Source: Asterias rubens
Lineage: Eukaryota
Direction of reading: 5' to 3'
Length of the DNA stretch: 64,000 nucleotides
Assembly (NCBI RefSeq): GCF_902459465.1
Contig: NC_047080.1
Span: 186,001 to 250,000, forward strand
In this document: positions 13,601 to 52,369 of the stretch, in pieces
How positions within the stretch are numbered: position 1 is the first letter of the stretch
How the letters are laid out: each line of letters begins with the position of its first letter
Translations under genes and position numbers: made by a program
Notes under the pieces: generated by a model
Databases searched by the model: none
What the model was told of the DNA's origin: nothing
Seen by the model: only the letters and a program-made list of their open reading frames with translations

Positions 13601-15758
13601 AAAGATATTAAATAAATCATAATAAACAACTCATGCACCATCTTTGTCATGCCCCATGTTATCAAAATAAAGTTATTAATAATTACAACATAACTCTGAA
13701 CAGATGTTAAATTTTCATCGGGGGATACTGCATGTTATTTGTTTTTACCCTTGAATATAACAATAATAACAATAATAACCGTATTTATAACGCGCCTTTT
13801 GCCAGAGGATACAAAGCGCCAGGTATTATTACTGCAAGGAGTGGGGTGAATTTTGAGATATGACCTAATCCTTAAGCACCATGTAATGGTTTACAAGGTG
13901 CTGTGGCGCAATATGCTGCCAATCCAGCCAGGAACACCGGGGCGAACCCCTTCTCTTTTCGATAAGTGCACTGGGTTATTTTACATGCGTTTACACAACA
14001 CATTGGACCAACGGCTTTATGTCCCATCCGAAGGACGAAGCAATGGTTATGTGTCTTGCTTAAGGACACAAGTGCCATGGCTGGGGAATTGAACCCACAC
14101 TCTGCTGATCAGAAACACCAGAGTTTGAATTCGGTGCTCTTAACCGCTCGGCCACGACACTCCCTCAACACAATTGAAAGATATTTAGTGGACTCAAACG
14201 TCATCATTTGAACTTTCGTTTCCTTTTTTTTCTTTACAAAGTGAATCTTTCAGTCAATTAAAAAAAATCCCAAGACCACCGAAATTGTTCAGTCCTAAAT
14301 TTACTGGCTCCAGGTCATCCTGGTCAGAACCCTGGTCCAATGTTAAATTATTAAGTAGGATTTGAAACTTTGCATGGTGGAAATACGATATAGAAAGGTT
14401 TGCGGTAACACCATGTAATGACTATCTCTAATGAGTAGGATTTGAAACTTTGCATGGTGGAAATACGATATAGAAAGGTTTGCGCTAACACCATGTAATG
14501 ACTATCTCTAATGAGTAGGATTTGAAACTTTGCATGGTGGAAATACGATATAGAAAGGTTTGCGCTAACACCATGTAATGACTATCTCTAATGAGTAGGA
14601 TTTGAAACTTTGCATGGTGGAAATACGATATAGAAAGGTTTGCGCTAACACCATGTAATGCCTATCTCTAATGAGTAGGATTTGAAACTTTGCATGGTGG
14701 AAATACGATATAGAAAGGTTTGCGCTAACACCATGTAATGACTATCTCTAATGAGTAGGATTTGAAACTTTGCATGGTGGAAATACGATATAGAAAGGTT
14801 TGCGCTAACACCATGTAATGACTATCTCTAATGAGTAGGATTTGAAACTTTGCATGGTGGAAATACGATATAGAAAGGTTTGCGGTAACACCATGTAATG
14901 ACTATCTCTAATGAGTAGGATTTGAAACTTTGCATGGTGGAAATACGATATAGAAAGGTTTGCGGTAACACCATGTAATGACTATCTCTAATGAGTTGGG
15001 GTGGTTCTGAAAAAAACCGTTGGTTTCAACTCACCGTTTCGATCAGTTTGCTCTGATCGTTAAATTGTGAGTTGGGCTACATGATTAACTTGACTTACTT
15101 CTGTCACTCCGGGAATTGTTCACGTTGAGCGGACGGTTTGTTTCCATTACACTTACTGAAGTACATCCAGCGTCTGCTTGGTCTCCTCTCTCCACATAAA
15201 AACCTAGAGATGCAAAAATTAAGAACATTTCTCAGACGCTAAGATTGAAAAATGCATCTCTTTTTAATAATAATATGGATTTATAAAGCACTTCTCTATA
15301 AAACCAAAGCATTGTACATTTGAAAATTGCTCTTTACAAAGTAACTTTCTTTGCTATCAACTATTTTAAGTAACTACCAATAGTGTTCAGCCCCTTTATT
15401 GGGTGATTTTCATATCACATATTTGTTTTTGTAACCTACCTTCTTTTTCCAACTCAGCCTCGGTTGATTCTATTTTAGTCAGAATTTCATCATTTTCACA
15501 TTGCTCAAGGACCTTCTTCAGATTTCTATAATCCACTGTATGTGAGGGGTGAGTTTTCACTTTGAACACCCCTTTGTGCTCCATTTTGTCAAGTAATTTT
15601 TGTGGTGTGTCCAATTTTTCCAATTCTCCAGCCAGGAATCCACCATACTCCTTTGTTTTGACGGTGTTCTTCATTTGATTAAACAGATCTCTATCTATGG
15701 CTTTGGTCAAGTAGACAAGCAAAGCCGAGTGAGCTTTGGGTTTTCCTGTTCGAGACAT
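10673..15758 (-). CDS. Initiator-type caspase with N-terminal death-effector-domain-like prodomain, about 418 aa
   Basis: Exons 15440-15758, 15099-15203, 13435-13572, 12656-12888, 12131-12218, 11377-11541, 10673-10881 (1257 nt, phases match). Motifs GYLLFINNF..RRKG, FVFILGSHG (catalytic His), KPKVFIIQACRA (catalytic Cys), ADMLISYAT, KAWR..GTWYI, KQMP. The acceptor at 15807 implies an upstream 5' UTR exon. The 15099-15203 exon is the least certain. Confidence 0.9.
11851..12077 (+). mobile_element. 5'-truncated CR1/L2-type LINE 3' end
   Basis: Translates as WNLLPKQVNESPTLDVFKNKL, the typical ORF2 C-terminal motif. It is followed by a UTR and a (GAT)n tail at 12062-12077. Confidence 0.65.
12280..12630. 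mobile_element. MITE with TTAAAGG..CTTT(C)AA ends (Kolobok/piggyBac-like TTAA target)
   Basis: Degenerate TIRs TTAAAGGTACCGCAC / GTGTCTAGTGGCTTTCAA. Related fragments near 16260-16313, 26500-26610, 42457-42900 and 46190-46462. Confidence 0.65.
13757..14160 (-). mobile_element. tRNA-derived SINE
   Basis: Minus-strand head GTGTCGTGGCCGAGCGG (A box) and GGTTCAATTCC (B box), a central GTGTCCTTAAGCAAGACAC motif and a (TTA)n-type tail. Related copies at about 210-345, 49080-49340 and 50640-50870; a second SINE type with CAGGTACCCAT..TACCCCT at about 540-750 and 13020-13240. Confidence 0.8.
14355..14997. repeat. 80-bp minisatellite, 8 near-identical copies, in a caspase intron
   Basis: TTTGAAACTT recurs at 14361, 14441, 14521, 14601, 14681, 14761, 14841 and 14921. 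Confidence 0.97.
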
Positions 15759-18065: not shown

Positions 18066-19114
18066 AGCCTACTTTCAAGGCCAAGGGACATCGAGAAAAA
18101 TTCCTAAGCTTATTCATTCGATATGAATGAAATATCCTGGTGTCATGTGTTTTCAGTAGGATAACAGGAAAATTGTACACAATCAAAAACTAAATATTTT
18201 TTTTTCAAATCATCTATCAAATTTTTTAACAATAACACTTTCACTTCATGGTGTGTTGAAATTTTTAAAGTTTTGGTTTTACGTTGCGAGAGACAGTCCG
18301 CCATTAACAGTGCTTGTGCATGCACGACATTGGAGCAACGTCATATGTTTTCACACCTTTCATTGGTTGGTATTTTATTGAATATTCAGAAGCTAGTATG
18401 GCGGGCAAAGTAAATCAAAAATACTATTCAATTAGTACTTAACAAATTTAATTACATTTTTGTCCTAAGGCATTATGGCTACTATATTAGAATCCAGAGA
18501 TATCATAAGGCATGAAAGTAAAACACCCCACCCCCCCCTTGATGCACTCACACTTCATAACAATCCGTTTTCCCCCATTTCAGACCAGTAATGTTTGGTT
18601 TCAGGAGATAAGAAACCAATCTATGATATTTTCTCTTAAATGTAGACTTAATATTTATTACGCTTATCGGAATTTATAACAGTTATGCAGTAAATAAATA
18701 AAAAATATTGTTGTCATTTTCACTTAAAATATTTTAATATTTTCCCCACATTTGCACACCATAGAATCCCAAATAGTAACCACCTCACGTGATCCATCTA
18801 GTGACTAAAGCAGAATGAAACTCAATCCTAGCAGATAGTAATTTTGTTTTGAACTTTCGAGGTTGGATGATGTTTCTTTGACTCACTTGAATGTTGGCAT
18901 AATAATGCACTAGTGATTAGTACCAAAAATCAATCATTTTATAAATGTTTGAGCATAACCAACGAACGGAAACTTTATTCTCAGCATGATTAAGCCTGAT
19001 GAAAATACAGACCGTAAGTAAACTGCATAGCTTCTGTCACCGGTGCAGCTTGCACAATTTCGCGGTAAACGGGAATCAAAGTTGGGGACCGAAACCATGC
19101 CATATGAGGGTCGA

Positions 19115-19431
19115 TAAGGCCGAGTAAAAAAAAAAACATGTTTCACGTCCGGGTTTTTCAAAAAAAGGAGGAAGAGGGGCTTTTTATTTTTTATTTCAAG
19201 ATGGCCGCCATTCTTTGTTAAAATGTCAAATATCCATTGTTTTTTCTACTGCTGAAATACACAAAACATAAATGAAACAATTGAGTTGAGGCATTCACTG
19301 AGATCATTTAAAATAACCCTATTTAAAAAGAAGAAAAAAAATGTGCATAAAAAATAAAATAAAAAAGGAGGCGGCCTGTAAAAAGGAAGCGGGCGGGGAC
19401 GCGAAACATGTTTTTTTTTTACTTGGTCTAA
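19115..19431. mobile_element. MITE with about 35-bp TIRs
   Basis: TAAGGCCGAGTAAAAAAAAAAACATGTTTCACGTCC versus the reverse complement of GGACGCGAAACATGTTTTTTTTTTACTTGGTCTAA. Confidence 0.7.
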
Positions 19432-19685
19432 CGTATGACGCTACGAATTTACCTCAATGAGAGATATCCCTTTTTGTAAAAATGAGTGAAAAAGTGGTGG
19501 CGCCATACGTAAAGTTATCCACACCCCAAGCACATACTGTGTTTTTTTTTTACATTGATGATGAAAATTGTGAAAACAAGCACATTTTACTTACTATCTT
19601 AATGTTGATGTTTTGGGACGTCAGCACTCTCCACAATCGGGTGATAATCAGAACCAGGAATTAACTAAAATCACCAGGGACTTTC

Positions 19686-19770
19686 CATAGACCTTATTGC
19701 AGATAGCAATTTTGAACAACTGCGCATGTGCGCGCAAAGGACTGTGGGAAAAATTTGGCACCTCGCTCAA
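19686..19770 (+). promoter_or_regulatory. Promoter-like module, copy 1 (ZNF143/Staf site plus NRF1-like motif)
   Basis: CATAGACCTTATTGCAGATAGCA, then TGCGCATGTGCGCGCA, then CGCAAAGGACTGTGGGAAA (reverse complement close to the Staf consensus). CpG-rich. Confidence 0.65.
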
Positions 19771-19818
19771 AAAAGTAAACAACGTTCAACGTTCGTACAC
19801 GATCGATCGGTTTGCAAA

Positions 19819-22087
19819 ATGGATGTGGCAGGAGTGACCGAGAAAGAGCTGGTTGATAGAATAAATAGTTCTGGCATAGACAAACTAAGGTAATCTTTAG
19901 CTAAAGTGAATGTGACAAGACACAGTAGTTAAAGACAAACTCCAAAGGCGACATTTTTTCGCGATAAAATTACTGTTTTTAGGTTTGCCCGTCTACGTCT
20001 GTAGGGCGTCGGAAGACTGACATTGACAAGGTCAATGGCGAGAAGTTGCAACACGGATCAGTGACCCTCCCGCAACCATCAGTCACCCTCGAAGGATCGG
20101 AAATAACAACCAAAACTTCCCACCAGTGACTCCGATTTGTGCTGATAAATACTTCGACAAAAGCATGGACGACCTCCATGACAAAAGTAAGACATTTTTT
20201 TCTGTTACAAAACAGAGAAACATTGCCAAGGTCATGATGATCGAGGACTGTCATGACTGTTTTACAAAAAATAAAAACATTTCTTATTCCTGGTCTAGAT
20301 AGAGTCTAGATATAGCTCTATGGATAAAGCCCATCAATGGTTACATTGTCTTGATTCGATTGTATCTGTAATACTGATCAGCAATGACGTGGACGTAAAT
20401 AGAATAGCTTTCAATCATGGTAGTTGTACATTTTTAAAACTTTATGTGGCAGATGATACTTTTTCCTTATTTCTCACACCATCAACTTTTTAGGTCTACC
20501 ACTGATATGGTTCAAAATTAAAGTGACCAAAAGTGACTAAGTAATTGTGGTTTATGTTTATATTTATTAATATAAATCTATTTCTACCTCCATGGTTATA
20601 CCGTAGATCATGACATGACAAGTACGACAAGTGTAGGTCCTAGCATACTTCTAGTTTCTAGAACTTACAAGTAGTCCTAGCATAAACATGTTTTTATCAA
20701 GGGTTCAGTTTATACAAGTTTGATGTACACGTATTGTACGAACATGATTCTGTGTATAATATAATTACATACTTTGTGCTTTGTTTTGTGCATGTATTAC
20801 AAAAATGATACTTTTAGTACACTGTACCATAAAGCATCAAGTTGTAAGCTTTATTGTTAGACCCTACTGGTACTGTAATAATGGTATGTTTGTTATGCCT
20901 ATAATTTTATCATATGATATGAGACTATGAGTTTTTGTAGGTTTGTAATTCGAAAAGCAAGGACTAGGTCACATGAGCGAAACCCTTCTTAAGGTAGGAA
21001 TTTGAAAAAAGAATATAATTTCTTTTTAATTTTTGTTTTCAAATAAGTTTGATTTATTCAACAACAAAAATAGATTCTGCATTGGGCATCCTCAAAAAAT
21101 AAATCCTTTTGGTTTTACTTGGAAATTGTTACCATTTAACTTTATTATTTTGGGGGCAACTATCCCAATTAATACATTTTTGATTCTAAACGATTCTAAA
21201 CTAATTATACTGATAGGTCTCATTTTGTAGTTTGGTGAAAAGTCATTTCAAACCTTGCCATCAAAGAAGAAGTATTGTGAGCACTTAAATGTGATTCTCT
21301 GCAAACTCTGCATCTTAAAAATTTGGATTTAAATTAACAAGTAAGTTGACTGGCACTGTGGTCAGGTGGTTCAGGGCCCACTAATAATGGGTTCAGTACT
21401 GCCAGAGGCAATTTGTAATGTATTAAGCTGTCTCATGACTTCACAAAGCCATTAAAACAATTGATATTTATTAAGCTGCAGCCACCTTTGGCAAACACGG
21501 CATGCATGTCAGAGTCCTTGTTCACAAAAAGACTCTAGAAGAGGGATCAGACTATCTTCTACACCCACAGGTTGGAATGGAATCTAAAGATGACAGTGCC
21601 ATGATAAAACTGCAGCTTTGTATAAAACCTGTGACAAATTCTTGTTTGTGAATGCTATATCATGCATGTTGTGAGTTTAACTCCCGAGGTTGGTGTGAAA
21701 ACAATTGTTCACAATCTAACCAGCATCTGTAATTATTTGACCCATTTTATGGTGAGAGTTTAAAGGTTTCATTGATAACTGTGGGTACACATAATTTAAC
21801 TCTTGCTGAAAATAAATCCAAACCTGTCACACTTTTTGTTCAATATATTTGTTTACAAACACTTTTATTTTATAATTTCCATCCTTTAATTTTTTTCTTC
21901 AAATATCTAAATTGGTAATATTAACTTTATAACACACTTGGTATTTTCATGGCCCCTTAAAAACACTTACATTGCAGTTTACTTCACTCAATTATTATCT
22001 ACCCTTGTTTGCCTCAGGTATTGTTCATGTTGACTGTACTGAGGCAGTTAACTACAACCCTCTAGATCTTTGCAATTGCAACCCTTG
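19819..22087 (+). ncRNA. Putative multi-exon transcription unit without a long ORF (lncRNA, micropeptide gene or decayed gene)
   Basis: Co-oriented candidate exons 19819-19889, 19983-20186, 20861-20883, 20941-20993, 21231-21340, 21571-21670, 22018-22087, with pyrimidine-rich AG acceptors and donors GTAAGA, GTATGT, GTAGGA, GTAAGT, GTGAGT. The spliced ORF is only 30 aa. Confidence 0.4.
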
Positions 22088-23696
22088 GTATTATTTAAAT
22101 CTTTGCATTATGAAGTATTATTGTATGATTTAAGTAACCAGAATAAATGAAGCTTTAAACTCTTTAAGACAGTGGAAATGGACGTTTGGACAGTGTTATT
22201 GTTTGTATTGTATTGTATTATTCTACTTTCTCTGAGAATTGTAGCCTACAACCGCAGGACGCCACGCACAGGCATATTAAGAAGCATTTGCGATACCTTC
22301 GCTTGCGTCACAGTTCACTCTGCAATTAACATTTATCTTTTCATCGCCAATTTACGTGTCATCAGTCAAAAATGGCCTCAAGAGCATGAAGACACACACA
22401 CACACACACAGCCTTTAGTCAATTCAGAAGATGGTCAATGAGCTCTCCTGCAGCAAAAGAAGTAGGATGTGGTTGGTCGAGTCCACAAAACAACAGTACA
22501 GATCACATCTTTGGAGTGAACACAGAACTGGGAGAATAACTGCTTCCAATATGAGTCCTGTCACGAAGCATGTTGATGCACAAGTAATTATCTGAAAGAT
22601 AAAGCAGACAAAAACTAAGGGAATAAATGAGTGGTTACAAGTTCTTAAAAAGGCGTTTAAAACAGGCAGGGTCGTGGTCGTTCAGCCCTTGTTTCCTCTT
22701 TTACGTGTCTTATTTGATGACCTGACATGTGTTGCATTTTAATGACTGAGACAGTTTTCGGATGCATTGTGTGGTGTGTGCGTAGTTAGTCTTGGTGCAA
22801 GACGTTTCTTGTTTTGCTTTCACACCCAGCGCGGCCAACTCACAAACATCACCCGTATCGGTGAAACATCTAGCACCAAGACCAGCACATATTATGCATA
22901 AACATATCCGAAAACAACCGGTTATAAACAGCTCCAGCTGGTCTTTATCACTCGTTAACTTTAAACACCCTGACCCCACGTGAAGCGCTTTCCACCACAA
23001 CAGGAATGCAGATAGCGAAACTGATTGAGGCATTTATGAATGATCTTTTGCCTTGTAAATCATAACCAAACACTCTGCCCTGAAAGTCAGTCATGACTAA
23101 TATGACTATGAGCTAATTAATGAGCAGTATCATTATCAGAATATTGATATTATATTCTGAATATAATATCAATATCTGTTATTATCTCTAAAAAATGTTG
23201 AGGAATATATAATTGAATAGGCCTATGTTTCTTTTTTAGTTTCTACCACCAATCACACATAAATCTAGCCTATACAATACTCAAACTGTAGCCTACAGCT
23301 TGCTGGGTTTGACATGCTTGATGATTTAATCATGACCCGGTCATGATTAAATCATCAACAAGCTTTATTGATATTTTATTAAACTATTTTGTGTTCATTC
23401 AAAGTCAAAAGAACATGCATGGACCTACCTACGTATGTACATACATGTACACTCCCTCGTTCTTCCGTTGAGTCGCAAAGCACACACACTGGTCCGATGG
23501 CATTATTGTCGTAGTTTTTTATATTAATAATACACATCTGACATGGCTAAATAAAGCATGGAGGTACACCCATTCGTGGGTGAAACTGTCTTCCGCCACA
23601 GAAGCATAACCGTCCACCACAAACAATGTCAATGTTTACAAACTTATTGTTTACAAAAAAACTTTGTAGAACACGTTACGTGACGACCGTATAACT

Positions 23697-23766
23697 GGAG
23701 GTGCAAAATATTTCCCACAATCCTTTGCGGGAAGTCGGATTTATGCTATCTGCAATAAGGTCTATG
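23697..23766 (-). promoter_or_regulatory. Promoter-like module, copy 2 (inverted), 140 bp upstream of the CaRF-MULE ATG
   Basis: TTTCCCACAATCCTTTGCG matches the Staf/ZNF143 consensus with one mismatch. The terminal 23-bp block is identical to copy 1. Confidence 0.65.
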
Positions 23767-23906
23767 CTAGTATGGTACCGCCGTCGTCGAAGAGGGCGTT
23801 CTATAGTGACCCGGCGACCGTTTGCGGTTTATGTATTTGCGGCAGAGAGAGTAGAGAGAGAGCACGAAACAGTCGCCGTCGTTTGATTGCCGCATTTGCA
23901 AACAAA

Positions 23907-26900
23907 ATGGAGGGAGAAGATGGCGATCTCGTTGCTGCTGCCATAATGGCGATGCAAACAGACGTCGATCCTGGCGACGAAACCACCATCCTTCAAGTCG
24001 TTACCCAGTCTGAATGTGCCGGAGACGAACAGGTCGGTAACCAGATTATGGTTCATTCTTCCGACGGAGAGATAATTGTCCACGAGCATTCGGCAGCGCT
24101 GCAGCAGCATTTGCAAGAAGTGCAGCAACTTCAACATCACCACCACCACCACCACCACCAACAACAACAACCCAATGACCAACAACAACATCAGCATCAA
24201 TCCCTCCACCCCAGTGGAACTGTTGCCCTGAATGAATCTTCTATGACAATAGACACGACATCTATGGGTGTTGATCTTCAGGAAGTCAATGTGATTGAGA
24301 TGCCACTTGCGCAAAGTTCACAGCAGGTTGAGACTTCAGTGGTGCATGATCAACAAGGCTTTACAAAAAGGGTTTTCCCAGTCTCGGTATGAAAAAAATG
24401 ATTTAGTCATGAATTTTAACATTATAAAACACAGCAATAGGCATCGCATAACAATATATAACGGTTTCTGCATCCTGCCACCACTTTTTTTATTCACTAT
24501 GAAATAAATTGTTATCTAATTTACTCAGTCTCAAAAATAGATTTTCCGTTATGGACTTATGGTAAATTAAGTGGTGGCCAGATTGGATGTGGAAATATTT
24601 CCTTATTAATTTAGTAATGATTGATCCTTACACAGTGACATTGTGTTCTTTGACTCCAGGTTACTCAAGCGACACCATTGGAAATCGCGACGGAAGTCCC
24701 AGAGGTTGATGTTTCAGGCATCGATGAGAATGTGTCAAAACTCTGCCTGCAATTTCTCAATGATGTTGAGGAGGTAGGAAAAGACAAGTCATGGCCCAAG
24801 ACGTTAGTGATCGATAGTGAAATTGTACATTATCCACTGTCATGCTATTTATTGCTATCGACTAGCCCAAGTTGGACTCCTCCGTTGGGCACTGACTGAT
24901 GTCCTACACCAGGGCTAGCTATCGACCAGAGTGTACACTAAACCAACTATCAATTATTAAAGTGTACACTATCCACTGACAATCACTGACCTCTTGGGCC
25001 AAGACTAGGAAAAGACCAACATCTGCACTTTTTGTGACCCAACAAAAACATGAAATAACAACCAAAAATTAAAGGTTAATCCATCAATCTGAGTTGCGAA
25101 AAATAGCGAGGGAAAAACAGATATTGTATGCGCTTGTTTTTTTTTATTAGAATAAGATGACCATGCATTCAGACACTGTATTCAGTTGATACTGAAAATT
25201 TGTCTTGCAATGAATTTTATTGCTTTGAGAAATCGCCCCCAGGATTGGTTAAGCTGCACTATCGGTCGAACGCGTGAACCCATTTCTGCACGATCAGTCG
25301 ATCGCGCAAAACTTTTCCTGCACGATCGGTTGATTGTGCAAACCCCATTCCTGCACGATCGGTAGATTGCGCAAAGCCTTTCCTGCACGATCGGCTGATC
25401 ACGTAAAAAAAACTCGTAGCACGATCGGTCAATCGCGCAAAGATGTTCATTGCGCGATCGACCGATTGTTGCCTGATCGACCAGTTGTTGCGCGTTTGAC
25501 CGATTGCTGAGCGACCAATTGATCTATAATAGCTCAGCGCGATCAACAGATCGCGCAGATTGACTGATCGCGCCCAACATAAACACCAAACAGCAAACCT
25601 CTCGCGTACAAACATTGGTTGAACATCTATGATAATGAATTGTACAAATCAAGAAATTGTGATGCAGTAGCTAGCTGACAATACTTACAAATTCTATTCA
25701 CTGTGAAATCAGCAGTTAGCTTGATAGGATTCAAACCCACAACCTGGTAACTGCAAGTCCTACAGTCTTACCAATGGACCTGCAGTGACCACACAACATT
25801 ACTTTGAAGAAAAATGGTTGTTTTTTCTCCAATCTTAAAAATTGTAACCAAACTGGAAGAAAATAGAATTAGCTGGATTGCAAACAACTTACCAACCAAA
25901 ATGGACCGAGGTAATAAATGCAAAAAACTGGAAGAAGAAGTAGTCTGGTTCCTTTTTGGGGAAATCAATGTTTGCATTATAATTACTGCTATGAGATACA
26001 GAAAACAACACCAAGATGTTGGCATTATGCTTAAAGTCCTATTATTTTGTATGTACAGGTAGACGGCAACTACTTGAGAGGTTCTCATGAGGGACCTGGT
26101 ATTAGCTTTGAGGAGTTTCTAAGCAAGTACTTCTGCATCACAGGCACATCATTCGTTGCCGTCAGTAATAGAAGTAGGACCATGCCGTTAACTGGCCAGC
26201 AACGCCAGTCTCGCTACTATGGAAACTGTGAAGGTGAGGAAATGAACAATAAAAGCAGTGTTTATTATGTTGTTTTCATTGTCGACGCTTTTTGTTTAAA
26301 GGGAAGGTATCTGTTGTAATCAATCTTAAAATGTATAACATCGAAAAAACTTTGGTTAGAAGCCTACAGCAGCTTTTTATATTATCTACATTTATATAGG
26401 ATTAAAACTATAAAACCGTTTTAATATCGAACAGTTCCAAAAACCAAAGGTATACTTTGCCTTTCAAGGCAGAATATACTCTTTTTTTTAGTACTTACTC
26501 CACAAGTAAACTACCATTAAAACTTATATGATAAACATCATTGGAGAGCTACTGGTAGTATAAAACATTGTTATAAATGACCTCTTTAAAGAAATGTTGT
26601 TTTAGGGGGTTATTTGTTCACCCACAAATTTTCACTTTATTTTTCTAAAAAACTTGACGACTAATGAAGCTGAAACTTCTACAGGTTAATAGTTTTCAAT
26701 ATAAACCACATAGGAAACTGACTGGGTAAATTTTGAAATGATTTTTGGGGTTGAACAAAGAATTGACCAGAGTGGGATTCGAACCAACGACCTCCGGATT
26801 AACGGCCGGCACGTTAATCCGGATGTCGTTGGTTCGGCACGTTAATCCAGAGGTCGTTGGTTTGAATCCCACTCTAGTCAATTCTTTGTTCAACCCCGAA

Positions 26901-29900
26901 AATCGGTTAATAGTTTTATATACATCTTCATACACAGTGAGTATGGATTTATATCATGGCTAACATTTTATCTGCAAAAGGTATCCAAACCCATATGGGA
27001 ACATCAGGGGGTACCCTCTACCCCCATATTGGACATGGTGTATTTTATATATAACTGCATGGTCGTACTTCTACAACTTACCCAGTCAGTTAATGTTATA
27101 TTACTGATGTCTGTGGATGTGCTTTCTCAGAATAATTGTTTTGTTCAATGATTTTTACAAAACTATGTTCAGGTCGTATACGCTGGGAGGCAAAAGGTGG
27201 CACACTTCCCATTGAGTTTTGTGGGTACCCGTTTAAGATAGAGAGCTCCATGTACCTACATTGCTTACATGGCCCAAAAAGAGTAAGTCTAGTTATGTGC
27301 TAGGGAGTTTTTGGTGTTTTTTAAATTTCTACCTATCTTTTTTCTTTTTTCTTTTTTTTGAAGAGGGGGGGGGAGGCGGTCATTACTACAAATTTTGAAT
27401 TGGAAAGTAGTTCAAAAACCTTCATTCAAAAAATACCCCCCATAAACCATTTGGGGTCAAAGAGTGAACCAATAAACAAGAAAACTGCTAATGATAAAGA
27501 ACTTGTACTCGGATGGAACCAGTGACTTCAGCGTGCTGAACATGATGTTGGTAGGTGATGATACCCTGACTGGACACACCCAAGCCACAAGAAAGTCCAT
27601 TGATCTTATAAAAGCTGGGTTGAGTTTTAATATTTTTATTTGTATTCACTCATGAGATTTTAATAATGGTCAAACACACAAACAAAAGCAACACTTGTTA
27701 CACAATTGTTATTGCACATTGCACTTACTTAACTTAAATTCTTTTTTCTCTGAAGGATCTTCGTCCGAAGGAACCCAAACCTCCCAAAGTTAGTCGAAGA
27801 GGGCGCCCGAGAAGTGCATTGAATAGGAAGTTGGAATGCCCCGCAGTGATCCAAGTGAGAGAGATCAGTGTATACACAAATGAAGGCTACTTCGTTGACA
27901 AGAAAGAGTTCAAGAACTCGAGCAAGCTTCGCTGGGAGAAGCAGAGAATCTTGAAGAAGATCCGAGACGACGAAGGTAACGGTAAGGAAGTAACCACAAC
28001 AAGGAGGCTGTATATTAAGATGCCATATGTGAGAGTTCACTCATCGCTTCATCCGGTCGGCGAAAACTCAGCAGCAAACCAGACCATGGATCAACGAGTC
28101 CTGCAAAAACTGAAGCAGTTGATCTCCAACAATGTGACTAACATCAATGAGATCAAGAAATGCTTGAAGGTGTATGTTGACGACGTCCTCTTCAAGCACA
28201 ACCCTATCGAGAAGAAGCCAAAGCCGTTTAATCGGAAGTTCTATCCTTCCCCGTCTGATGTCCAGCGACAGATTGCTGCGTCTCTGTCGACTAAGTCAGA
28301 GAATACCGACATGTTGGCTCAAAACGTGAAGGCTTGGCAAGCAAGAGGGACTGGGAAATTCTTTTATCGATCTCACCAGTCTGGTTCAGAAGAATCCTTT
28401 TTGTTTGTTCAACAGGAGAGGTGGCAGCAGAGGTTGCTGGAAAGGTACGGAAGCGACTTAGTGATTCTTGATGCAACCTCAAAGTCAAACACCATCCTGA
28501 CCATGGCGACTCCGTTGTACTGCCTCTGCATTCATACCAATGTCAACTACATTGTTGTAGCTGTTTTTCTAGTAGAGAAGGAGACAGTGGCCAACATCAA
28601 GGAAGCTTTAGGTGTTATCCAAAGCTGGAACACCTGGTGGAATCCAAGCTCTTTCATGGTGGACAAGTGCAACATTGAGGTAGCCGCAGTCAAAGAACTA
28701 TTCCCAAATGTGCGCATCTACATAAGTGACTACCACAGGAAACAGTCACTGAACAGGTGGGTCAGTCGGAAGGAGTGTGGTCTGGACTCGGACCAGCAGA
28801 AGAGAGTTCTGGCCATGTTTGACAGAATTGCCTTGGAGCAGAATAATACGTTGTACCAGAGCGCCAAGAAGGAATTCATGAGTGACGAGACAGTAGCCGA
28901 GAACATCGAGTTTCTTGACTACTTGCAGTCAGAATGGTTCTCCTGTCCAGAAACTTGGGCTCATGGATTCCGTGACTATGCCATAGACAACCTCATCAAT
29001 GTAAACAATGGGGAGCTTGCCATGGATCGCTTCTTTCGCTACTCCACGATACCCAAGAGCAGAGACAAGGGTGTCCTCGGCATAGTGACACTCATCGTTG
29101 AGTCCTACATACCGGATGCCTTTCACAAATATCGCAAGAAGAATGCAGCGTGGAAGTACACGAAATTCCCAACAGCAGTCCAGAATGTGCCTGAATATTT
29201 GCGGGAGCGACCGTCACACTTTGTCCGCGAGTGTTTAAAGAACCAGGAAGACGCTGTCACGTACAACAACGTCGACGTTCAGTTGATGGACCCCACACAT
29301 GGAGTATTTCACGTCAGGTCCAAGAAAGGTTTCCACATAACAAGCTTTCTCGGACCGAGCTGCACTTGCAACATGTGGAAGAAGTTCCGCTTCCCCTGCA
29401 AGCATTTCTTTGCGATTTTCCTGCATTTCTACGAATGGGGTTTCCACCGTCTGCCGGAGCTATACATCAACAGTGTTTTCCTGACGCGGGACATCGGAGT
29501 TTTACAAGACCCCAATGCTGAAGCAGCCAGAGTCTCCCAAGAGTACACACCGCTTGAGATCCAAGTGATGATACCAGGAGGTCCAGAGCCTTGCTCGACG
29601 GAGACAGTCGTCAGCACAGCGGAAACCGTTTCAAGCTTCAATCCAATCACCTCCAATCCAGTCAACTTGATCTCCATTCCTGAACTTGAAGACCCTTCTG
29701 CGAAGAGCGCAGAAACCGTCCCTGCCGAAGTTGAAGTTGATCCTCTCCTCGATGGCAAGCAGAGGAATATAGTGAACATTTTTAAGCGAGGTATGGACTT
29801 GATTAATGACATCTCAGACCAGGAGCTCATATCGGAGACAGAGCAGGTTCTAACCCTCATGGTGACGAAGCTACAGCGACGGGTAGTGCACAATCATTAC

Positions 29901-30035
29901 ATGCAGAGTGCATTGCCCTCAATCAAGAGACTTAAACCCAACCCTCCTCAGGAGCCTCAGCAGCTGCCACAAGTTGACCCTAACCAGCAACAAGAACAAG
30001 TAACTATCGATTGCGTAACCAGTTCCTACTGGTGA
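23907..30035 (+). CDS. CaRF-like DNA-binding domain + MULE (Mutator) transposase domain + SWIM zinc finger, about 1052 aa; probable domesticated transposase
   Basis: Exons 23907-24386, 24660-24773, 26059-26233, 27173-27282, 27756-30035 (3159 nt, phases match). His/Gln-rich N-terminus. CaRF-type motifs FCGYPF..HCLHGPKR, KLECPAVI, YIKMPYVRVHSSLH, NRKFYPSPSDV. AT-hook RRGRPR. MULE motifs VILDATSK, FMVD, ISDYH, NVNNGEL. SWIM CTC..WKKFRFPCKHFFA. Confidence 0.88.
25258..25575. repeat. Degenerate CpG-rich repeat (about 31 bp) that flips orientation mid-array
   Basis: CTGCACGATCGG..GATCGCGCAAA units on the + strand up to about 25440, then TTGCGCGATCGACCGAT-type inverted units. Confidence 0.7.
26745..26903. 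repeat. Palindrome made from the tRNA-like part of a dispersed repeat
   Basis: GTTGAACAAAGAATTGACCAGAGTGGGATTCGAACC mirrored by GGTTTGAATCCCACTCTAGTCAATTCTTTGTTCAAC. Linear relatives at about 5850-5980 and 49690-49965. Confidence 0.8.
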
Positions 30036-30540: not shown

Positions 30541-33500
30541 CAGAAACTTACTAGGACAAGTATGCCTGGAGAAAAAAAAGGTTTTGCCGTAATGATAAGT
30601 ACAGGGTTAATCACAAAAACTTGTTCTTCATTTATTGATAAACCGCATGTTTTTATACAAAAAAAGATAGTTGTACTGTTTGGCAACCCCAACAATTGTT
30701 TTCTGGATGAAATGATTACTGAATGGTTTTCAGAAATGAGTGAAGTTCATACAAATTTAAACCAAATCAAACTTACATTTTGGTGATGATACATGTAAAT
30801 ATTGGTTAATCACAATTTCCTCGGTAAAATAATGTTTTATTTTTAAGTTATTAATTTTTTTTTAAGTTATTTTTTTTTAGTCAGTTGATTTTTAAAGGGA
30901 ATGCCCCAATTTGTTGACATTTTGTGGACCAGTTGATATTCATTGAAACATTTCACGTCTAATTTTCTCAAGGTACTCAACCCGTGTTGTCTTTCCTTTG
31001 ACAAGTCCGGGTTGCATTGTGGCAATATTTTCAAAAGAAAATAATCACTCTTGAAGCTTCAAAAATTCCTTCCTCCAATTATTCAATGAATTCCCTATCA
31101 TAGTGCATAAGTTTCATATACAAAACATTTGAATCCAAGAAACGATTCATACATGAATCAGTTTCTCGGATTTCTAAGGGTTGGTGACAATTTGCGATTG
31201 CTGCGGCCAGATGCAGTTGGCACCTTTCGTCAACACTAAAAATGGTAGTCTTTGTTCTTGTGACCCGGATAGTTTTTGGCTGTTTCTCAATCAGTAGACA
31301 CTAGAGGGTGTGTTGAGCTGAAACTTTCACAGGTGACTTTTATTGTATCTTTCTTTTAGTGCATCTTAATCAACACTACGATGACACAAACCAAATCAAT
31401 ACCCTCCCTAAAATATGTGGATTTTGAAGCACAAGACTAAACATTTTGCAGCGTAAACTATCGGGTTGCTGATTTTTTTTTATTACAAACAAAAAACTAC
31501 AAAGAACAAGAATTACAATGATTCTTTGTGTAAACAATCAATATAAATCTGCAACAAAGGATTTAAACCACAGCTAAATATAAAATTAAAAACATCAAAG
31601 TCACTAAAACTAAAGGACAAATAATGAAAATTACAAAAAGGCAAAGCTATGTCTCCTTAATGTTTCATATCAGATAGAAATAAATAAGTATTTAGTCAAG
31701 TTTTGCACACAAGTTGAAGATTTGCACAGAAGACTGCTCTATAAATTCTAACACCCCCATGTTCTGACAACCCTATGTACCGACAACCTATGTTCCTAAA
31801 AACTCTTGATGATTTACATGTTAGGGTTAGGTTTCATCGGGGTCTAACCATTTCCACAATTACATGGTATAAAGATGGACATGGTAAACTTCCCCTGATA
31901 TCTTTTTGCCTGAAATACTATAGTTTTTGTAGAGAAAGCAAGATGCTTAGTTTTGGTTTGGGAAAACAGTTAAAACATACATGGGGATTCCAACTGTTTT
32001 CTTCATACTCCGATGATCGATTGAGTTTTTAATTTTAACAGGCTTGTCATTTCATGTACTTGTTGGGTCATAAAGTGTAGATCCTGGTATTTTACAGTTT
32101 AATTACATGCTGCAGAAAATATTTGTGGGTACAACCATGTGTATAAACTTCTTTTGGAGGAGTGGGGTCTCAGCGTTTCAGTATACTCTGCTCTCTTTCC
32201 CTTTAACTCAATGAAGCGTAAAGGCAGTACAAAGTCTATTCCCATTTGATTTCTGCGATGTTTCTATTTTTTAACAGGAAAGTTGTGATGTTCCATGGCA
32301 TATTGTTTGTTATAGGACAGTAGTTCATTGTTATCTCCAATTCTCCTATCAATATGACGAAACCGAGGCTGAGAACACATTGTCTGGTCCCATCTTTCAG
32401 AAATGGCATTATGAACTTTGTCTTTTATGAATGTTGGTGGTCATTACTCCCAAGATGTTACCAGTTTTAACCCCTTAAATTAGTCTGTAAAATATCAAGT
32501 GTTTTTTTATTTGTTGTTTGTTTGTTATTGTGTACCTGTATTTGAATAAAAATACAAATTAATGAGAAAAATTATATACATGACCATCATATTGTAGCAT
32601 TTGTCCTTTCCCGTCCAATTGTGTGAAGGACCCAATATCATGGCTCTGCTTGCTGTAAAGGAAATAATTCCATGCTTGTGCACACTCACTCCAGCGCCCA
32701 AATTCATATAGCTGCTTCAGCAGAAAACACTGCTTTAAAAAAAATCTATGCTTAGCAATAATGAGTAGGATACCAGTGACGAGTTGTACATAATATGACT
32801 TAGTAATTTGGCTGGTAGCCTTGTTCTGGTGAGCATAATCTTGTTTTGCTTAGGTTATTTCTTGAAATAAGCAGCTCTATCAAATTGGGCGCATGTAATA
32901 AGCATCCTTCACTTATACACGTAGTGTAGACATTCAGCCTCTGTCTTGTAAGCGAAGAATGGTGTTGGTTAGCACATAATTAAGCAGTTGGCAGAGCCAG
33001 GAGTTTAAAGCAAAGTTTCTCTACAAACTTTAGTATCAGAAACATCAACACTTATCATTGGTCAGATTGGTATACATGTAACATCACTATGTTCCGACAC
33101 TCCAATGTTCCTTATGTGTTTTCCCAACTCTAACCAAAGCATATAACGTAAATGATCAGGGGTTTTACTTTTGGAACATAGTGTTTTCGAAATAATTAGA
33201 GCAACACAAGATCCTATCAAAACAAAATTGCAAAAAAAACTAAGAATTAAAAAGAAATCAGAATAATCGTCAAACTAATATTTATAATACATGTACATAG
33301 ATACTGTCATTATGAAAATCTTTTCATATGTTGTTGGTTTTTATTGCATTTTTTGTATAAAAGATGAGCAAAGTTTGTTCTTACAAAAGGATTTTTCTTA
33401 ATCTTTTGAAAAAGAAATCTGCATTTTAAATTTGTTTTGTACAATTATGGTGTTGCCATTATTGTCACACTAGCTTGGAACAAAAATTCAGCTCATTATC

Positions 33501-45515: not shown

Positions 45516-52369
<6,854 letters not shown>

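What the first reader, a model, noticed from the sequence alone, without database searches (positions are those of the whole stretch)
19686..23766. 4.08 kb cassette bounded by inverted copies of a promoter-like module, between the caspase and a transposase-derived gene
Seen: both ends begin with an identical 23-bp block (CATAGACCTTATTGCAGATAGCA), followed after a variable spacer by a second block matching at 29 of 32 positions (CGCAAAGGA[C/T]TGTGGGAAA..GCACCTC), in inverted orientation. Each copy is a solo arm and no TSD is visible. Knowledge: the second block fits the Staf/ZNF143 site typical of bidirectional promoters, the left spacer holds an NRF1-like TGCGCATGTGCG, and Mutator-type TIRs can carry promoters. 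Inference: this is an old TIR element (Pack-type or decayed) or an inverted promoter duplication whose arms now act as two bidirectional promoters. The right arm is 140 bp from the CaRF-MULE-SWIM ATG. The left arm sits beside a plausible caspase 5' UTR exon (minus-strand GTAAGT donor near 19595). Both arms may also drive inward transcripts, giving up to four transcription units from one TE-like module.
Basis: partly seen in the sequence, partly recalled or inferred. Interest (0 to 1): 0.75.

Follow-up and report, generated by a model that had tools for sequence, protein, structure and literature searches.

The report
Non-coding DNA transposon between two genes
The 4.08-kb stretch between a caspase gene and a transposase-derived gene of the starfish Asterias rubens is a decayed, non-coding jumping gene whose ends recur at other genomic sites, so it is an ordinary transposon copy, and no promoter role for its ends is shown.

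Summary
An exact 23-bp block (19686-19708 / 23744-23766) and a 32-bp block matching at 29 of 32 positions (19733-19764 / 23698-23729) lie inverted 4 kb apart. No other copy of either block is in the 64-kb window, and none is expected by chance.

The arms are the ends of a mobile element. Public contigs L006/L007, L008 and L009 are colinear with the interior at 93-98% identity. All stop matching the window at 19685-19687 and run on into three unrelated flanks. Contigs from RNA runs diverge the same way at 23765/6.

No copy has a long ORF. The only coding relic is the start of a YqaJ-type exonuclease domain (22431-22592). That domain marks the second gene of ISL2EU (PIF/Harbinger-related) transposons, but the superfamily remains unsettled. 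The window copy has no target-site duplication apart from a possible AT.

The inner block does fit the 18-bp ZNF143/Staf site. It is absent from the orthologous Acanthaster locus, and the RNA contigs show no splice of the proposed inward exon. The spacers between the two blocks are 24 and 14 nt, one helical turn apart. That suits a transposase-binding layout as in P elements.

The element probably landed in a short head-to-head promoter. Verdict: new member of a known kind, low to moderate interest.

The parts
19686..23766 (.). Whole element: a 4,081-bp non-autonomous DNA transposon copy with terminal inverted repeats
   Evidence: Exact 23-bp inverted termini. Other copies end at the same bases: 19685-19687 in L006-L009 and 23765/6 in X2 and X3 contigs. 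L006 is colinear from 19687 to 23377.
19686..19708 (+). Left terminal block (23 bp, CATAGACC...)
   Evidence: Kept at the end of L008 and L009. L006/L007 lack the first C and differ at 2 positions inside the block.
19709..19732 (+). Left spacer, 24 nt, containing TGCGCATGTGCG (19721-19732)
   Evidence: Kept in all four other copies (one base differs in L006/L007), so it is part of the element's left arm.
19733..19764 (+). Left subterminal block (32 bp). The minus strand of 19733-19750 reads as an 18-bp ZNF143/Staf-like site with 2 mismatches.
23698..23729 (-). Right subterminal block (29 of 32 identical to the left one). The plus strand of 23712-23729 reads as an 18-bp ZNF143/Staf-like site with 1 mismatch.
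23730..23743 (-). Right spacer, 14 nt, unalignable with the left spacer and 10 nt shorter
23744..23766 (-). Right terminal block (23 bp, exact inverted copy of the left one)
   Evidence: X3 record 21 and X2 record 16 run 47 and 62 letters beyond it into sequence unlike the window. The X2 flank letters are not found anywhere in the window.
22431..22592 (+). Relic of the first part of a YqaJ-type (lambda-exonuclease-like) domain, carrying the GRITASN motif. The rest of the domain is missing.
   Evidence: phmmer against 1.8 billion representatives: P0005 at 52% identity, E 8e-5; P0007 at 45%, E 6e-4. P0007 matches Pfam YqaJ at 3.8e-19 and P0005 matches Viral_alk_exo at 2.4e-6.
22763..22911 (.). 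Segment inside the element with much higher word depth, replaced by 29-39 other letters in some contigs. Probably a small nested repeat with inverted ends 22789-22808 / 22863-22882.
   Evidence: joints from 22763 to 22899-22911; depth 983-1884 in bin 22786-22979 in X1, X3 and X4, 51 in X2. pair I7.
19595..19685 (-). Left flank: plausible non-coding first exon of the caspase gene, ending at a GTAAGT donor (19594-19589)
   Evidence: Sequence. Six of 9 sampled words of 19560-19685 are held in runs X1 and X3 (X3 is shown to hold RNA by a spliced CaRF contig, X1's kind is only guessed). No splice or transcript start was seen directly.
23907..24385 (+). Right flank: first coding exon of the CaRF-MULE-SWIM gene (LOC117303538), followed by a GT..AG intron at 24386-24658
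   Evidence: a later exon of this gene, 27819-30032, is 100% identical to the A. rubens protein. (splice 24385 to 24659 in X3 and X4; contigs start at 23913-23922). (the Acanthaster ortholog aligns from 23900).

Best explanation
The cassette is one copy of a roughly 4-kb non-autonomous cut-and-paste DNA transposon family of Asterias. The two promoter-like arms are its bipartite terminal inverted repeats: a 23-bp terminal block where cleavage would occur, and a 32-bp subterminal block. The spacer between the blocks is 24 nt at one end and 14 nt at the other, a difference of one helical turn.

Shown: the same termini are joined to unrelated flanks at three or more other loci. The interior is colinear and non-coding in every copy. 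It carries a relic of a YqaJ-type exonuclease gene.

Inferred: the family descends from a two-gene element of the ISL2EU kind (PIF/Harbinger-related) and is moved in trans by a transposase encoded elsewhere. That transposase would recognise both blocks, the subterminal one perhaps through a THAP-type or other accessory DNA-binding domain. That would explain why both blocks, but not the spacers, are kept at both ends. The AT next to each end may be a 2-bp target duplication.

At this locus the element probably inserted into a short head-to-head promoter region. Removing it would put the putative caspase leader exon about 230 bp from the CaRF start codon.
For: The terminal inverted repeats are exact and unique in the window. 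L006/L007, L008 and L009 match the interior at 93-98% and diverge from the window at 19685-19687 into three mutually unlike flanks of 140-587 nt. L006 covers 19687-23377 colinearly. X3 and X2 contigs diverge at 19686/7 and 23765/6, and their flank letters are absent from the window. The variant pattern of the RNA-run contigs fits none of the five DNA contigs, so further copies or alleles exist. No ORF above 108 aa exists in the window copy, and none above 138 aa in L006 or L008. The YqaJ relic is documented. ISL2EU elements carry a YqaJ second ORF, have an AT TSD and average about 4.8 kb (PMC4482050). All observed ends read AT next to AGACC. The P element shows 9 versus 21 bp spacing between its terminal repeat and its THAP-binding site (PMC7776569). 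The CDS-to-CDS distance from caspase to CaRF is 4.85 kb in Acanthaster. Here it is about 8.15 kb, taking the ATG at 15758 of an unverified ORF as the caspase start; that leaves 4.07 kb without the element.
Against: The window copy has no target-site duplication other than the ambiguous palindromic AT. No paired ends of any other copy were obtained, so neither a TSD nor an empty site is shown. No transposase relic was found and no autonomous partner was identified. The terminal repeat does not start with GG, and the bases beside the AT are C/G rather than A/T as described for ISL2EU. The source organisms of L006-L009 are unknown (they are metagenome assemblies), so the number of copies per genome was not measured.
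Confidence: 0.82

Rival explanations
1. Exapted promoter arms. The element is a transposon, but its subterminal block is a working ZNF143/Staf site. The two arms would now act as upstream or bidirectional promoter elements for the caspase gene (left) and the CaRF-MULE-SWIM gene (right), and perhaps for inward transcripts. This is compatible with the transposon origin. It is a claim about present function.
For: The 18-bp site matches the recalled ZNF143 consensus with 1 and 2 mismatches. They are the only matches with 2 mismatches or fewer in 64 kb; one more with 3 mismatches lies at 31008-31025. A published SBS1 example has the same TTCCCA..AT.C...GCG frame, and human ZNF143 binds sites inside MLT1J retroelements (PMC3627581). 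The arms lie within about 200 bp of the first CaRF contig ends (23913-23922) and abut the putative caspase leader exon, whose words are held in RNA runs. The interior has high word depth (80-370) in the X1, X3 and X4 transcriptome runs.
Against: No transcript start or splice maps to either arm. The inward exon 19819-19889 is not spliced in any contig. Contigs read through the termini into other flanks, so that RNA comes from other copies or from read-through. The Acanthaster ortholog locus has neither block nor a good ZNF143-like site. Keeping the block at both ends at phased distances is what transposase binding requires.
Confidence: 0.15
2. Locus-specific inverted duplication of a promoter module. 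Two copies of a promoter were made in place, with no mobile element involved.
For: The similarity is limited to two short blocks with unrelated spacers. No TSD is present. Both arms sit next to gene starts.
Against: The left arm, with more than 1.5 to 3.7 kb of the same interior, is found joined to three other flanks. The right arm is joined to other flanks in RNA contigs.
Confidence: 0.02
3. A dispersed segmental duplicate or multi-copy non-coding RNA gene, not a cut-and-paste transposon. A transcribed 4-kb unit would have been copied to several places by another mechanism, with the inverted ends incidental.
For: There is unspliced, fairly high word depth over 19687-22300 in transcriptome runs. 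No TSD is seen. No transposase is present.
Against: The copies end at exactly the bases where the perfect inverted repeat ends, on both sides. The interior holds a transposon-type gene relic. No Rfam family matches.
Confidence: 0.06

Closest known systems
ISL2EU group of the PHIS (PIF/Harbinger-ISL2EU-Spy) superfamily of DNA transposons (PMC4482050)
   Same: It is the only group described as carrying a second ORF with a YqaJ exonuclease domain. Size is about 4-5 kb. The TSD is the dinucleotide AT, and here AT adjoins AGACC at every end seen. The elements have terminal inverted repeats.
   Different: No DDE, HTH or THAP transposase relic was found. The terminal repeat would start AG (or CA) rather than GG. 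The bases outside the AT are C/G, not the A and T of the A|AT|T target. Membership is not established.
Drosophila P element ends (PMC7776569)
   Same: A terminal inverted repeat plus an internal transposase-binding site at unequal distances at the two ends: 9 versus 21 bp there, 14 versus 24 nt here. The terminal repeat starts with CAT.
   Different: P elements make 8-bp TSDs and none is seen here. No P or THAP9-type transposase relic is present. The resemblance is one of architecture only.
Chapaev transposons with unequal bipartite ends noted elsewhere in this genome (scan notes s1-150171, s1-150105, s1-150189)
   Same: Two recognition blocks at both ends, set about 10 bp further apart at one end, in the same genome.
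   Different: Those elements encode a RAG1-like transposase and have heptamer-type ends. Nothing links this element to them, and their sequences were not compared here.
ZNF143/Staf-dependent bidirectional promoters, and ZNF143 sites carried by MLT1J retroelements in human (PMC3082894, PMC3627581)
   Same: An 18-bp SBS1-like sequence lies close to two head-to-head genes, and a repeat family carries the motif.
   Different: Binding and promoter activity are untested. The motif is not at the orthologous promoter in Acanthaster. There is no ACTACA extension.

Membership tests
Non-autonomous TIR (cut-and-paste) DNA transposon | Terminal inverted repeats at both ends | tested here: met
   23 of 23 exact inverted termini plus a 29 of 32 subterminal block
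Non-autonomous TIR (cut-and-paste) DNA transposon | Several copies at different loci that end at the same bases | tested here: met
   L006/L007, L008 and L009 diverge at 19685-19687 into three unlike flanks. X2 and X3 contigs diverge at 23765/6.
Non-autonomous TIR (cut-and-paste) DNA transposon | Target-site duplication flanking the copy | tested here: inconclusive
   No direct repeat of 3 bp or more in the window copy. Only a palindromic AT that could be a TSD or part of the terminal repeat. No paired ends of other copies were obtained.
Non-autonomous TIR (cut-and-paste) DNA transposon | No intact transposase gene (non-autonomous) | tested here: met
   Longest stop-free stretch is 108 aa. No Pfam transposase hit in 30 segments. 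No long ORF in L006 or L008.
ISL2EU (PHIS superfamily) | Second ORF with a YqaJ exonuclease domain | tested here: met
   A relic of the domain's start only, at 22431-22592. Family definition from PMC4482050.
ISL2EU (PHIS superfamily) | AT target-site duplication within an A|AT|T target | tested here: inconclusive
   AT is present at all ends seen. The outer bases are C, G, C, C or A on the left and G, G or A on the right, not A and T.
ISL2EU (PHIS superfamily) | DDE transposase with HTH and THAP domains | tested here: not met
   No relic found in the interior. An autonomous partner was not searched genome-wide.
ISL2EU (PHIS superfamily) | Terminal repeat usually starting with GG | tested here: not met
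   The ends read CATAGACC, or AGACC if the AT is a TSD
   Left flank ...GGGACTTTC versus right flank CTAGTATGG...
   The only recognisable coding relic is a transposon-type YqaJ start
ZNF143/Staf-dependent bidirectional promoter | 18-bp SBS motif | tested here: met
   1 and 2 mismatches to the consensus, which was recalled from memory. A published SBS1 example is in PMC3627581.
ZNF143/Staf-dependent bidirectional promoter | Transcript starts on both sides within a few hundred bp | tested here: inconclusive
   Assembled contigs only. CaRF contigs start at 23913-23922. The left flank is held in RNA runs. No transcript start is resolved.
ZNF143/Staf-dependent bidirectional promoter | Motif conserved at the orthologous promoter | tested here: not met
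   Absent from the 26.9-kb Acanthaster planci locus L003
ZNF143/Staf-dependent bidirectional promoter | Binding by ZNF143, and motif-dependent promoter activity | not testable with these tools
   Needs EMSA or ChIP and reporter assays

The most novel reading that the evidence does not exclude
The subterminal block would be a genuine ZNF143/Staf site carried by a mobile family with phase-locked, unequal ends. The family would then spread ready-made bidirectional promoter modules through the starfish genome. At this locus it would have replaced or supplemented the shared promoter of an apoptosis caspase and a domesticated MULE transposase gene.
Probability: 0.1. Interest if true: 0.6.

Novelty: new member of a known kind. 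Interest (0 to 1): 0.3.

Why it matters
The result turns an apparently special promoter cassette into an ordinary repeat copy, which should be masked or annotated as a transposon in Asterias rubens. Two points remain of modest interest. First, this is another transposon family in the same genome whose two recognition blocks sit one helical turn further apart at one end. That is the layout of P elements and of the 12/23 recombination signals, so starfish may be a good place to study how unequal ends are used. Second, the insertion sits between two head-to-head genes whose neighbourhood is also found in Acanthaster planci, a distantly related sea star, and it carries a near-perfect ZNF143-type site beside each. 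That gives a simple, testable case of whether a transposon splits or rewires a shared promoter.

Tried and rejected
- **Metagenome scan for the 23-mer.** It gave only two bacterial class II fumarase coding sequences (L001, L002). This is a chance identity (the 23-mer encodes SIDLIADS) with no bearing on the element.
- **Scans of genome contigs and viral contigs for the 31-nt subterminal block.** Nothing found.
- **Exact-protein look-ups.** Three interior ORFs, P0001, P0003 and P0005 are not on record. P0007 lies on a 1.6-kb contig with no context.
- **Orthologous empty site.** The Acanthaster locus keeps the caspase-CaRF neighbourhood, but the intergenic DNA cannot be aligned. This comparison neither shows nor excludes an empty site.
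- **Splicing explanation.** The idea that the divergence of RNA contigs at the ends was splicing or an inversion was dropped. The flank letters are not in the window and DNA contigs show the same breakpoints.
- **A third conserved block (ATG..TGTGGC) inside the arms.** It does not exceed shuffles.
- **Rfam and tRNA scans.** Nothing in the cassette.
- **Scan notes searched by sequence.** Blank.
- **Link to the neighbouring MULE-derived gene.** The orientation of the right arm puts that gene outside the element, and there is no third arm in the window.
Full report
**Observation.** The two arms exist exactly as described. The repeat finder reports a 23-nt perfectly complementary pair at 19686-19708 / 23744-23766 and a 32-nt pair at 19733-19764 / 23698-23729 with 29 of 32 matches. 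With up to three mismatches each block occurs only twice in the 64-kb window, against 0.00 and 0.02 expected from shuffles. The spacers between the blocks are 24 nt on the left and 14 nt on the right, and they cannot be aligned. Inward and outward of the blocks, the arms are no more alike than shuffled sequence. No direct repeat of 3 bp or more flanks the unit.

**Organism and neighbourhood.** The large exon at 27819-30032 is 100% identical to Asterias rubens LOC117303538, a protein with ALS2CR8/CaRF and ZSWIM1-3 RNaseH-like domains. Orthologs exist in Acanthaster planci (70% identity) and Patiria miniata (66%). In Acanthaster the same gene lies head to head with a caspase gene, 4.85 kb from coding start to coding start. 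So the gene neighbourhood is shared with a distantly related sea star. Neither block, nor any good ZNF143-like site, is present in that 26.9-kb locus. The intergenic DNA cannot be aligned between the two species.

**The arms are the ends of a mobile, multi-copy unit.**
- Contigs of four public runs were laid on 19100-24900. They match the interior continuously and then stop matching exactly at the outer ends of the 23-bp blocks.
- X3 record 17 covers 19686-21182 and has 27 unlike letters before it. X4 record 23 ends at 19687.
- X3 record 21 and X2 record 16 end at 23766 and 23765 and run on for 47 and 62 unlike letters.
- The printed flank letters are nowhere in the window.
- X3 and X4 do hold RNA, because they carry the GT..AG splice 24385 to 24659 of the CaRF gene.

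To see DNA copies, I searched the 91-aa ORF at 19982-20254 (minus strand). This found a small cluster of ORFs on public contigs, and the contigs were fetched.
- L006 is colinear with 19687-23377 at about 93-94% identity.
- L007 has an identical aligned left end and flank to L006 but comes from a second sample. L008 matches at 96% and L009 at 98%.
- All four lose the match at 19685-19687 and continue for 140-587 nt into three mutually unrelated flanks.
- The whole left arm, including its 24-nt spacer with TGCGCATGTGCG, is kept in all of them.
- The variant pattern of the RNA-run contigs fits none of these DNA contigs, so more copies or alleles exist.

A local promoter duplication cannot explain this. 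A transposon family does.

**Content of the element.**
- No copy has a long ORF.
- Thirty stop-free segments give no transposase domain in Pfam.
- One segment, 22431-22592 on the plus strand, carries the motif GRITASN. In a search of 1.8 billion representative proteins it hits P0005 (52% identity, E 8e-5) and P0007 (45%, E 6e-4), both at the start of their exonuclease domain. P0007 matches Pfam YqaJ at 3.8e-19 and P0005 matches Viral_alk_exo at 2.4e-6.
- The rest of the domain is gone.
- The interior also holds a higher-copy small repeat around 22763-22911. Relative to the other copies, the window copy differs by small indels at about 21182/21194 and at 22299/22300.

**Which kind of transposon.**
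- According to PMC4482050, ISL2EU elements of the PHIS superfamily are the group whose second ORF has a YqaJ domain. They average about 4.8 kb and make an AT duplication in an A|AT|T target. Their terminal repeats usually start with GG.
- Here every end seen reads AT next to AGACC (window, L006-L009, X2), so an AT duplication is possible. The AT is palindromic, though, and could equally belong to the terminal repeat.
- The outer bases are mostly C and G, the repeat does not start with GG, and no transposase relic remains.
- I therefore treat ISL2EU-like as the best guess only, at roughly one chance in three. Mutator or Pack-MULE features (8-10 bp TSD, captured host fragments) were tested and not met.

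**How the arms most likely work.**
- Both blocks are kept at both ends while the spacers are unrelated. The inner block lies 10 nt, one helical turn, further in at the left end.
- That is the layout expected of a cleavage site plus a second protein-binding site held on the same face of the helix.
- The P element has the same design, with 9 versus 21 bp between its terminal repeat and its THAP-binding site (PMC7776569).
- Earlier notes of this scan describe Chapaev elements of this genome with blocks set about 10 bp further apart at one end. I did not test those notes.
- This step is inference. No transposase was identified.

**The promoter reading.**
- The inner block fits the 18-bp ZNF143/Staf site with 1 and 2 mismatches. 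No other match with 2 or fewer mismatches occurs in the window. The consensus was recalled from memory; a published SBS1 example and transposon-borne ZNF143 sites are in PMC3627581.
- Nothing shows that the arms act as promoters. The proposed inward exon (19819-19889) is never spliced. Contigs run through the termini. CaRF contigs begin at 23913-23922, 147 nt or more beyond the arm.
- The left flank 19560-19685 is held in runs X1 and X3 (only X3 is shown to hold RNA) and ends at a GTAAGT donor on the minus strand. A caspase leader exon abutting the element is therefore plausible.
- Without the element, that exon would lie about 230 bp from the CaRF start codon.
- The coding-start distance would fall from about 8.15 kb to 4.07 kb, close to the 4.85 kb of Acanthaster. 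The 8.15-kb figure takes the ATG at 15758 of an ORF as the caspase start; that ORF was not checked against a caspase.
- The simplest reading is that the element landed in a short shared promoter. A scan note reports another 4-kb non-coding element in such a position (s1-172693; not tested, and not known to be the same family).

**Verdict.** The element is a new member of a known kind, with an unsettled superfamily. The main gaps are paired ends of other copies (for the TSD), an empty site, the autonomous partner, and mapped transcript starts.

Noticed in passing
window 19446-19521 (also 45681-45812, 46014-46170): A repeat of about 75 bp just left of the element has very high word depth in the runs laid (10^3 to 10^4 in X1, X3 and X4). 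Many contigs break at 19461 and 19520. Four further partial copies lie in the window. It is probably a SINE- or MITE-type high-copy repeat.
   Followed up: partly
window 19117-19429: A unit of about 310 bp bounded by 24-34-nt inverted ends (A-run plus CATGTTTCACGTCC; 96% complementary). It looks like a MITE inside the presumed caspase leader intron (pairs I3 and I8).
   Followed up: no
L001 1896-1918, L002 1208-1230: The exact 23-mer of the terminal block also occurs in two marine bacterial class II fumarase coding sequences, where it encodes SIDLIADS. This is a chance identity that could mislead k-mer searches in marine metagenomes.
   Followed up: yes
window 23318-23358 and 23141-23175: Two perfect palindromes inside the element, with 20-nt and 17-nt arms and a 1-nt centre (pairs I5, I9). 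Their role is unknown.
   Followed up: no
window 23907-30035; L003 10001-16911: The CaRF-MULE-SWIM gene has orthologs in three sea-star genera (66-70% identity). In Acanthaster it sits between a caspase gene and a Daxx-like gene, as expected of a long-domesticated transposase gene.
   Followed up: partly
window 21182-21194 and 22299/22300: The window copy lacks about 100 nt and 32 nt that the other copies and the RNA-run contigs carry at these points.
   Followed up: partly
window 51237-51309: A tRNA-Ser(AGA) gene, the only Rfam or ARAGORN hit in the window.
   Followed up: no
P0007 (L004 47-1177): The YqaJ protein closest to the relic has, upstream of its exonuclease domain, a CKH..A motif resembling the end of a SWIM zinc finger. 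This was judged by eye only.
   Followed up: no
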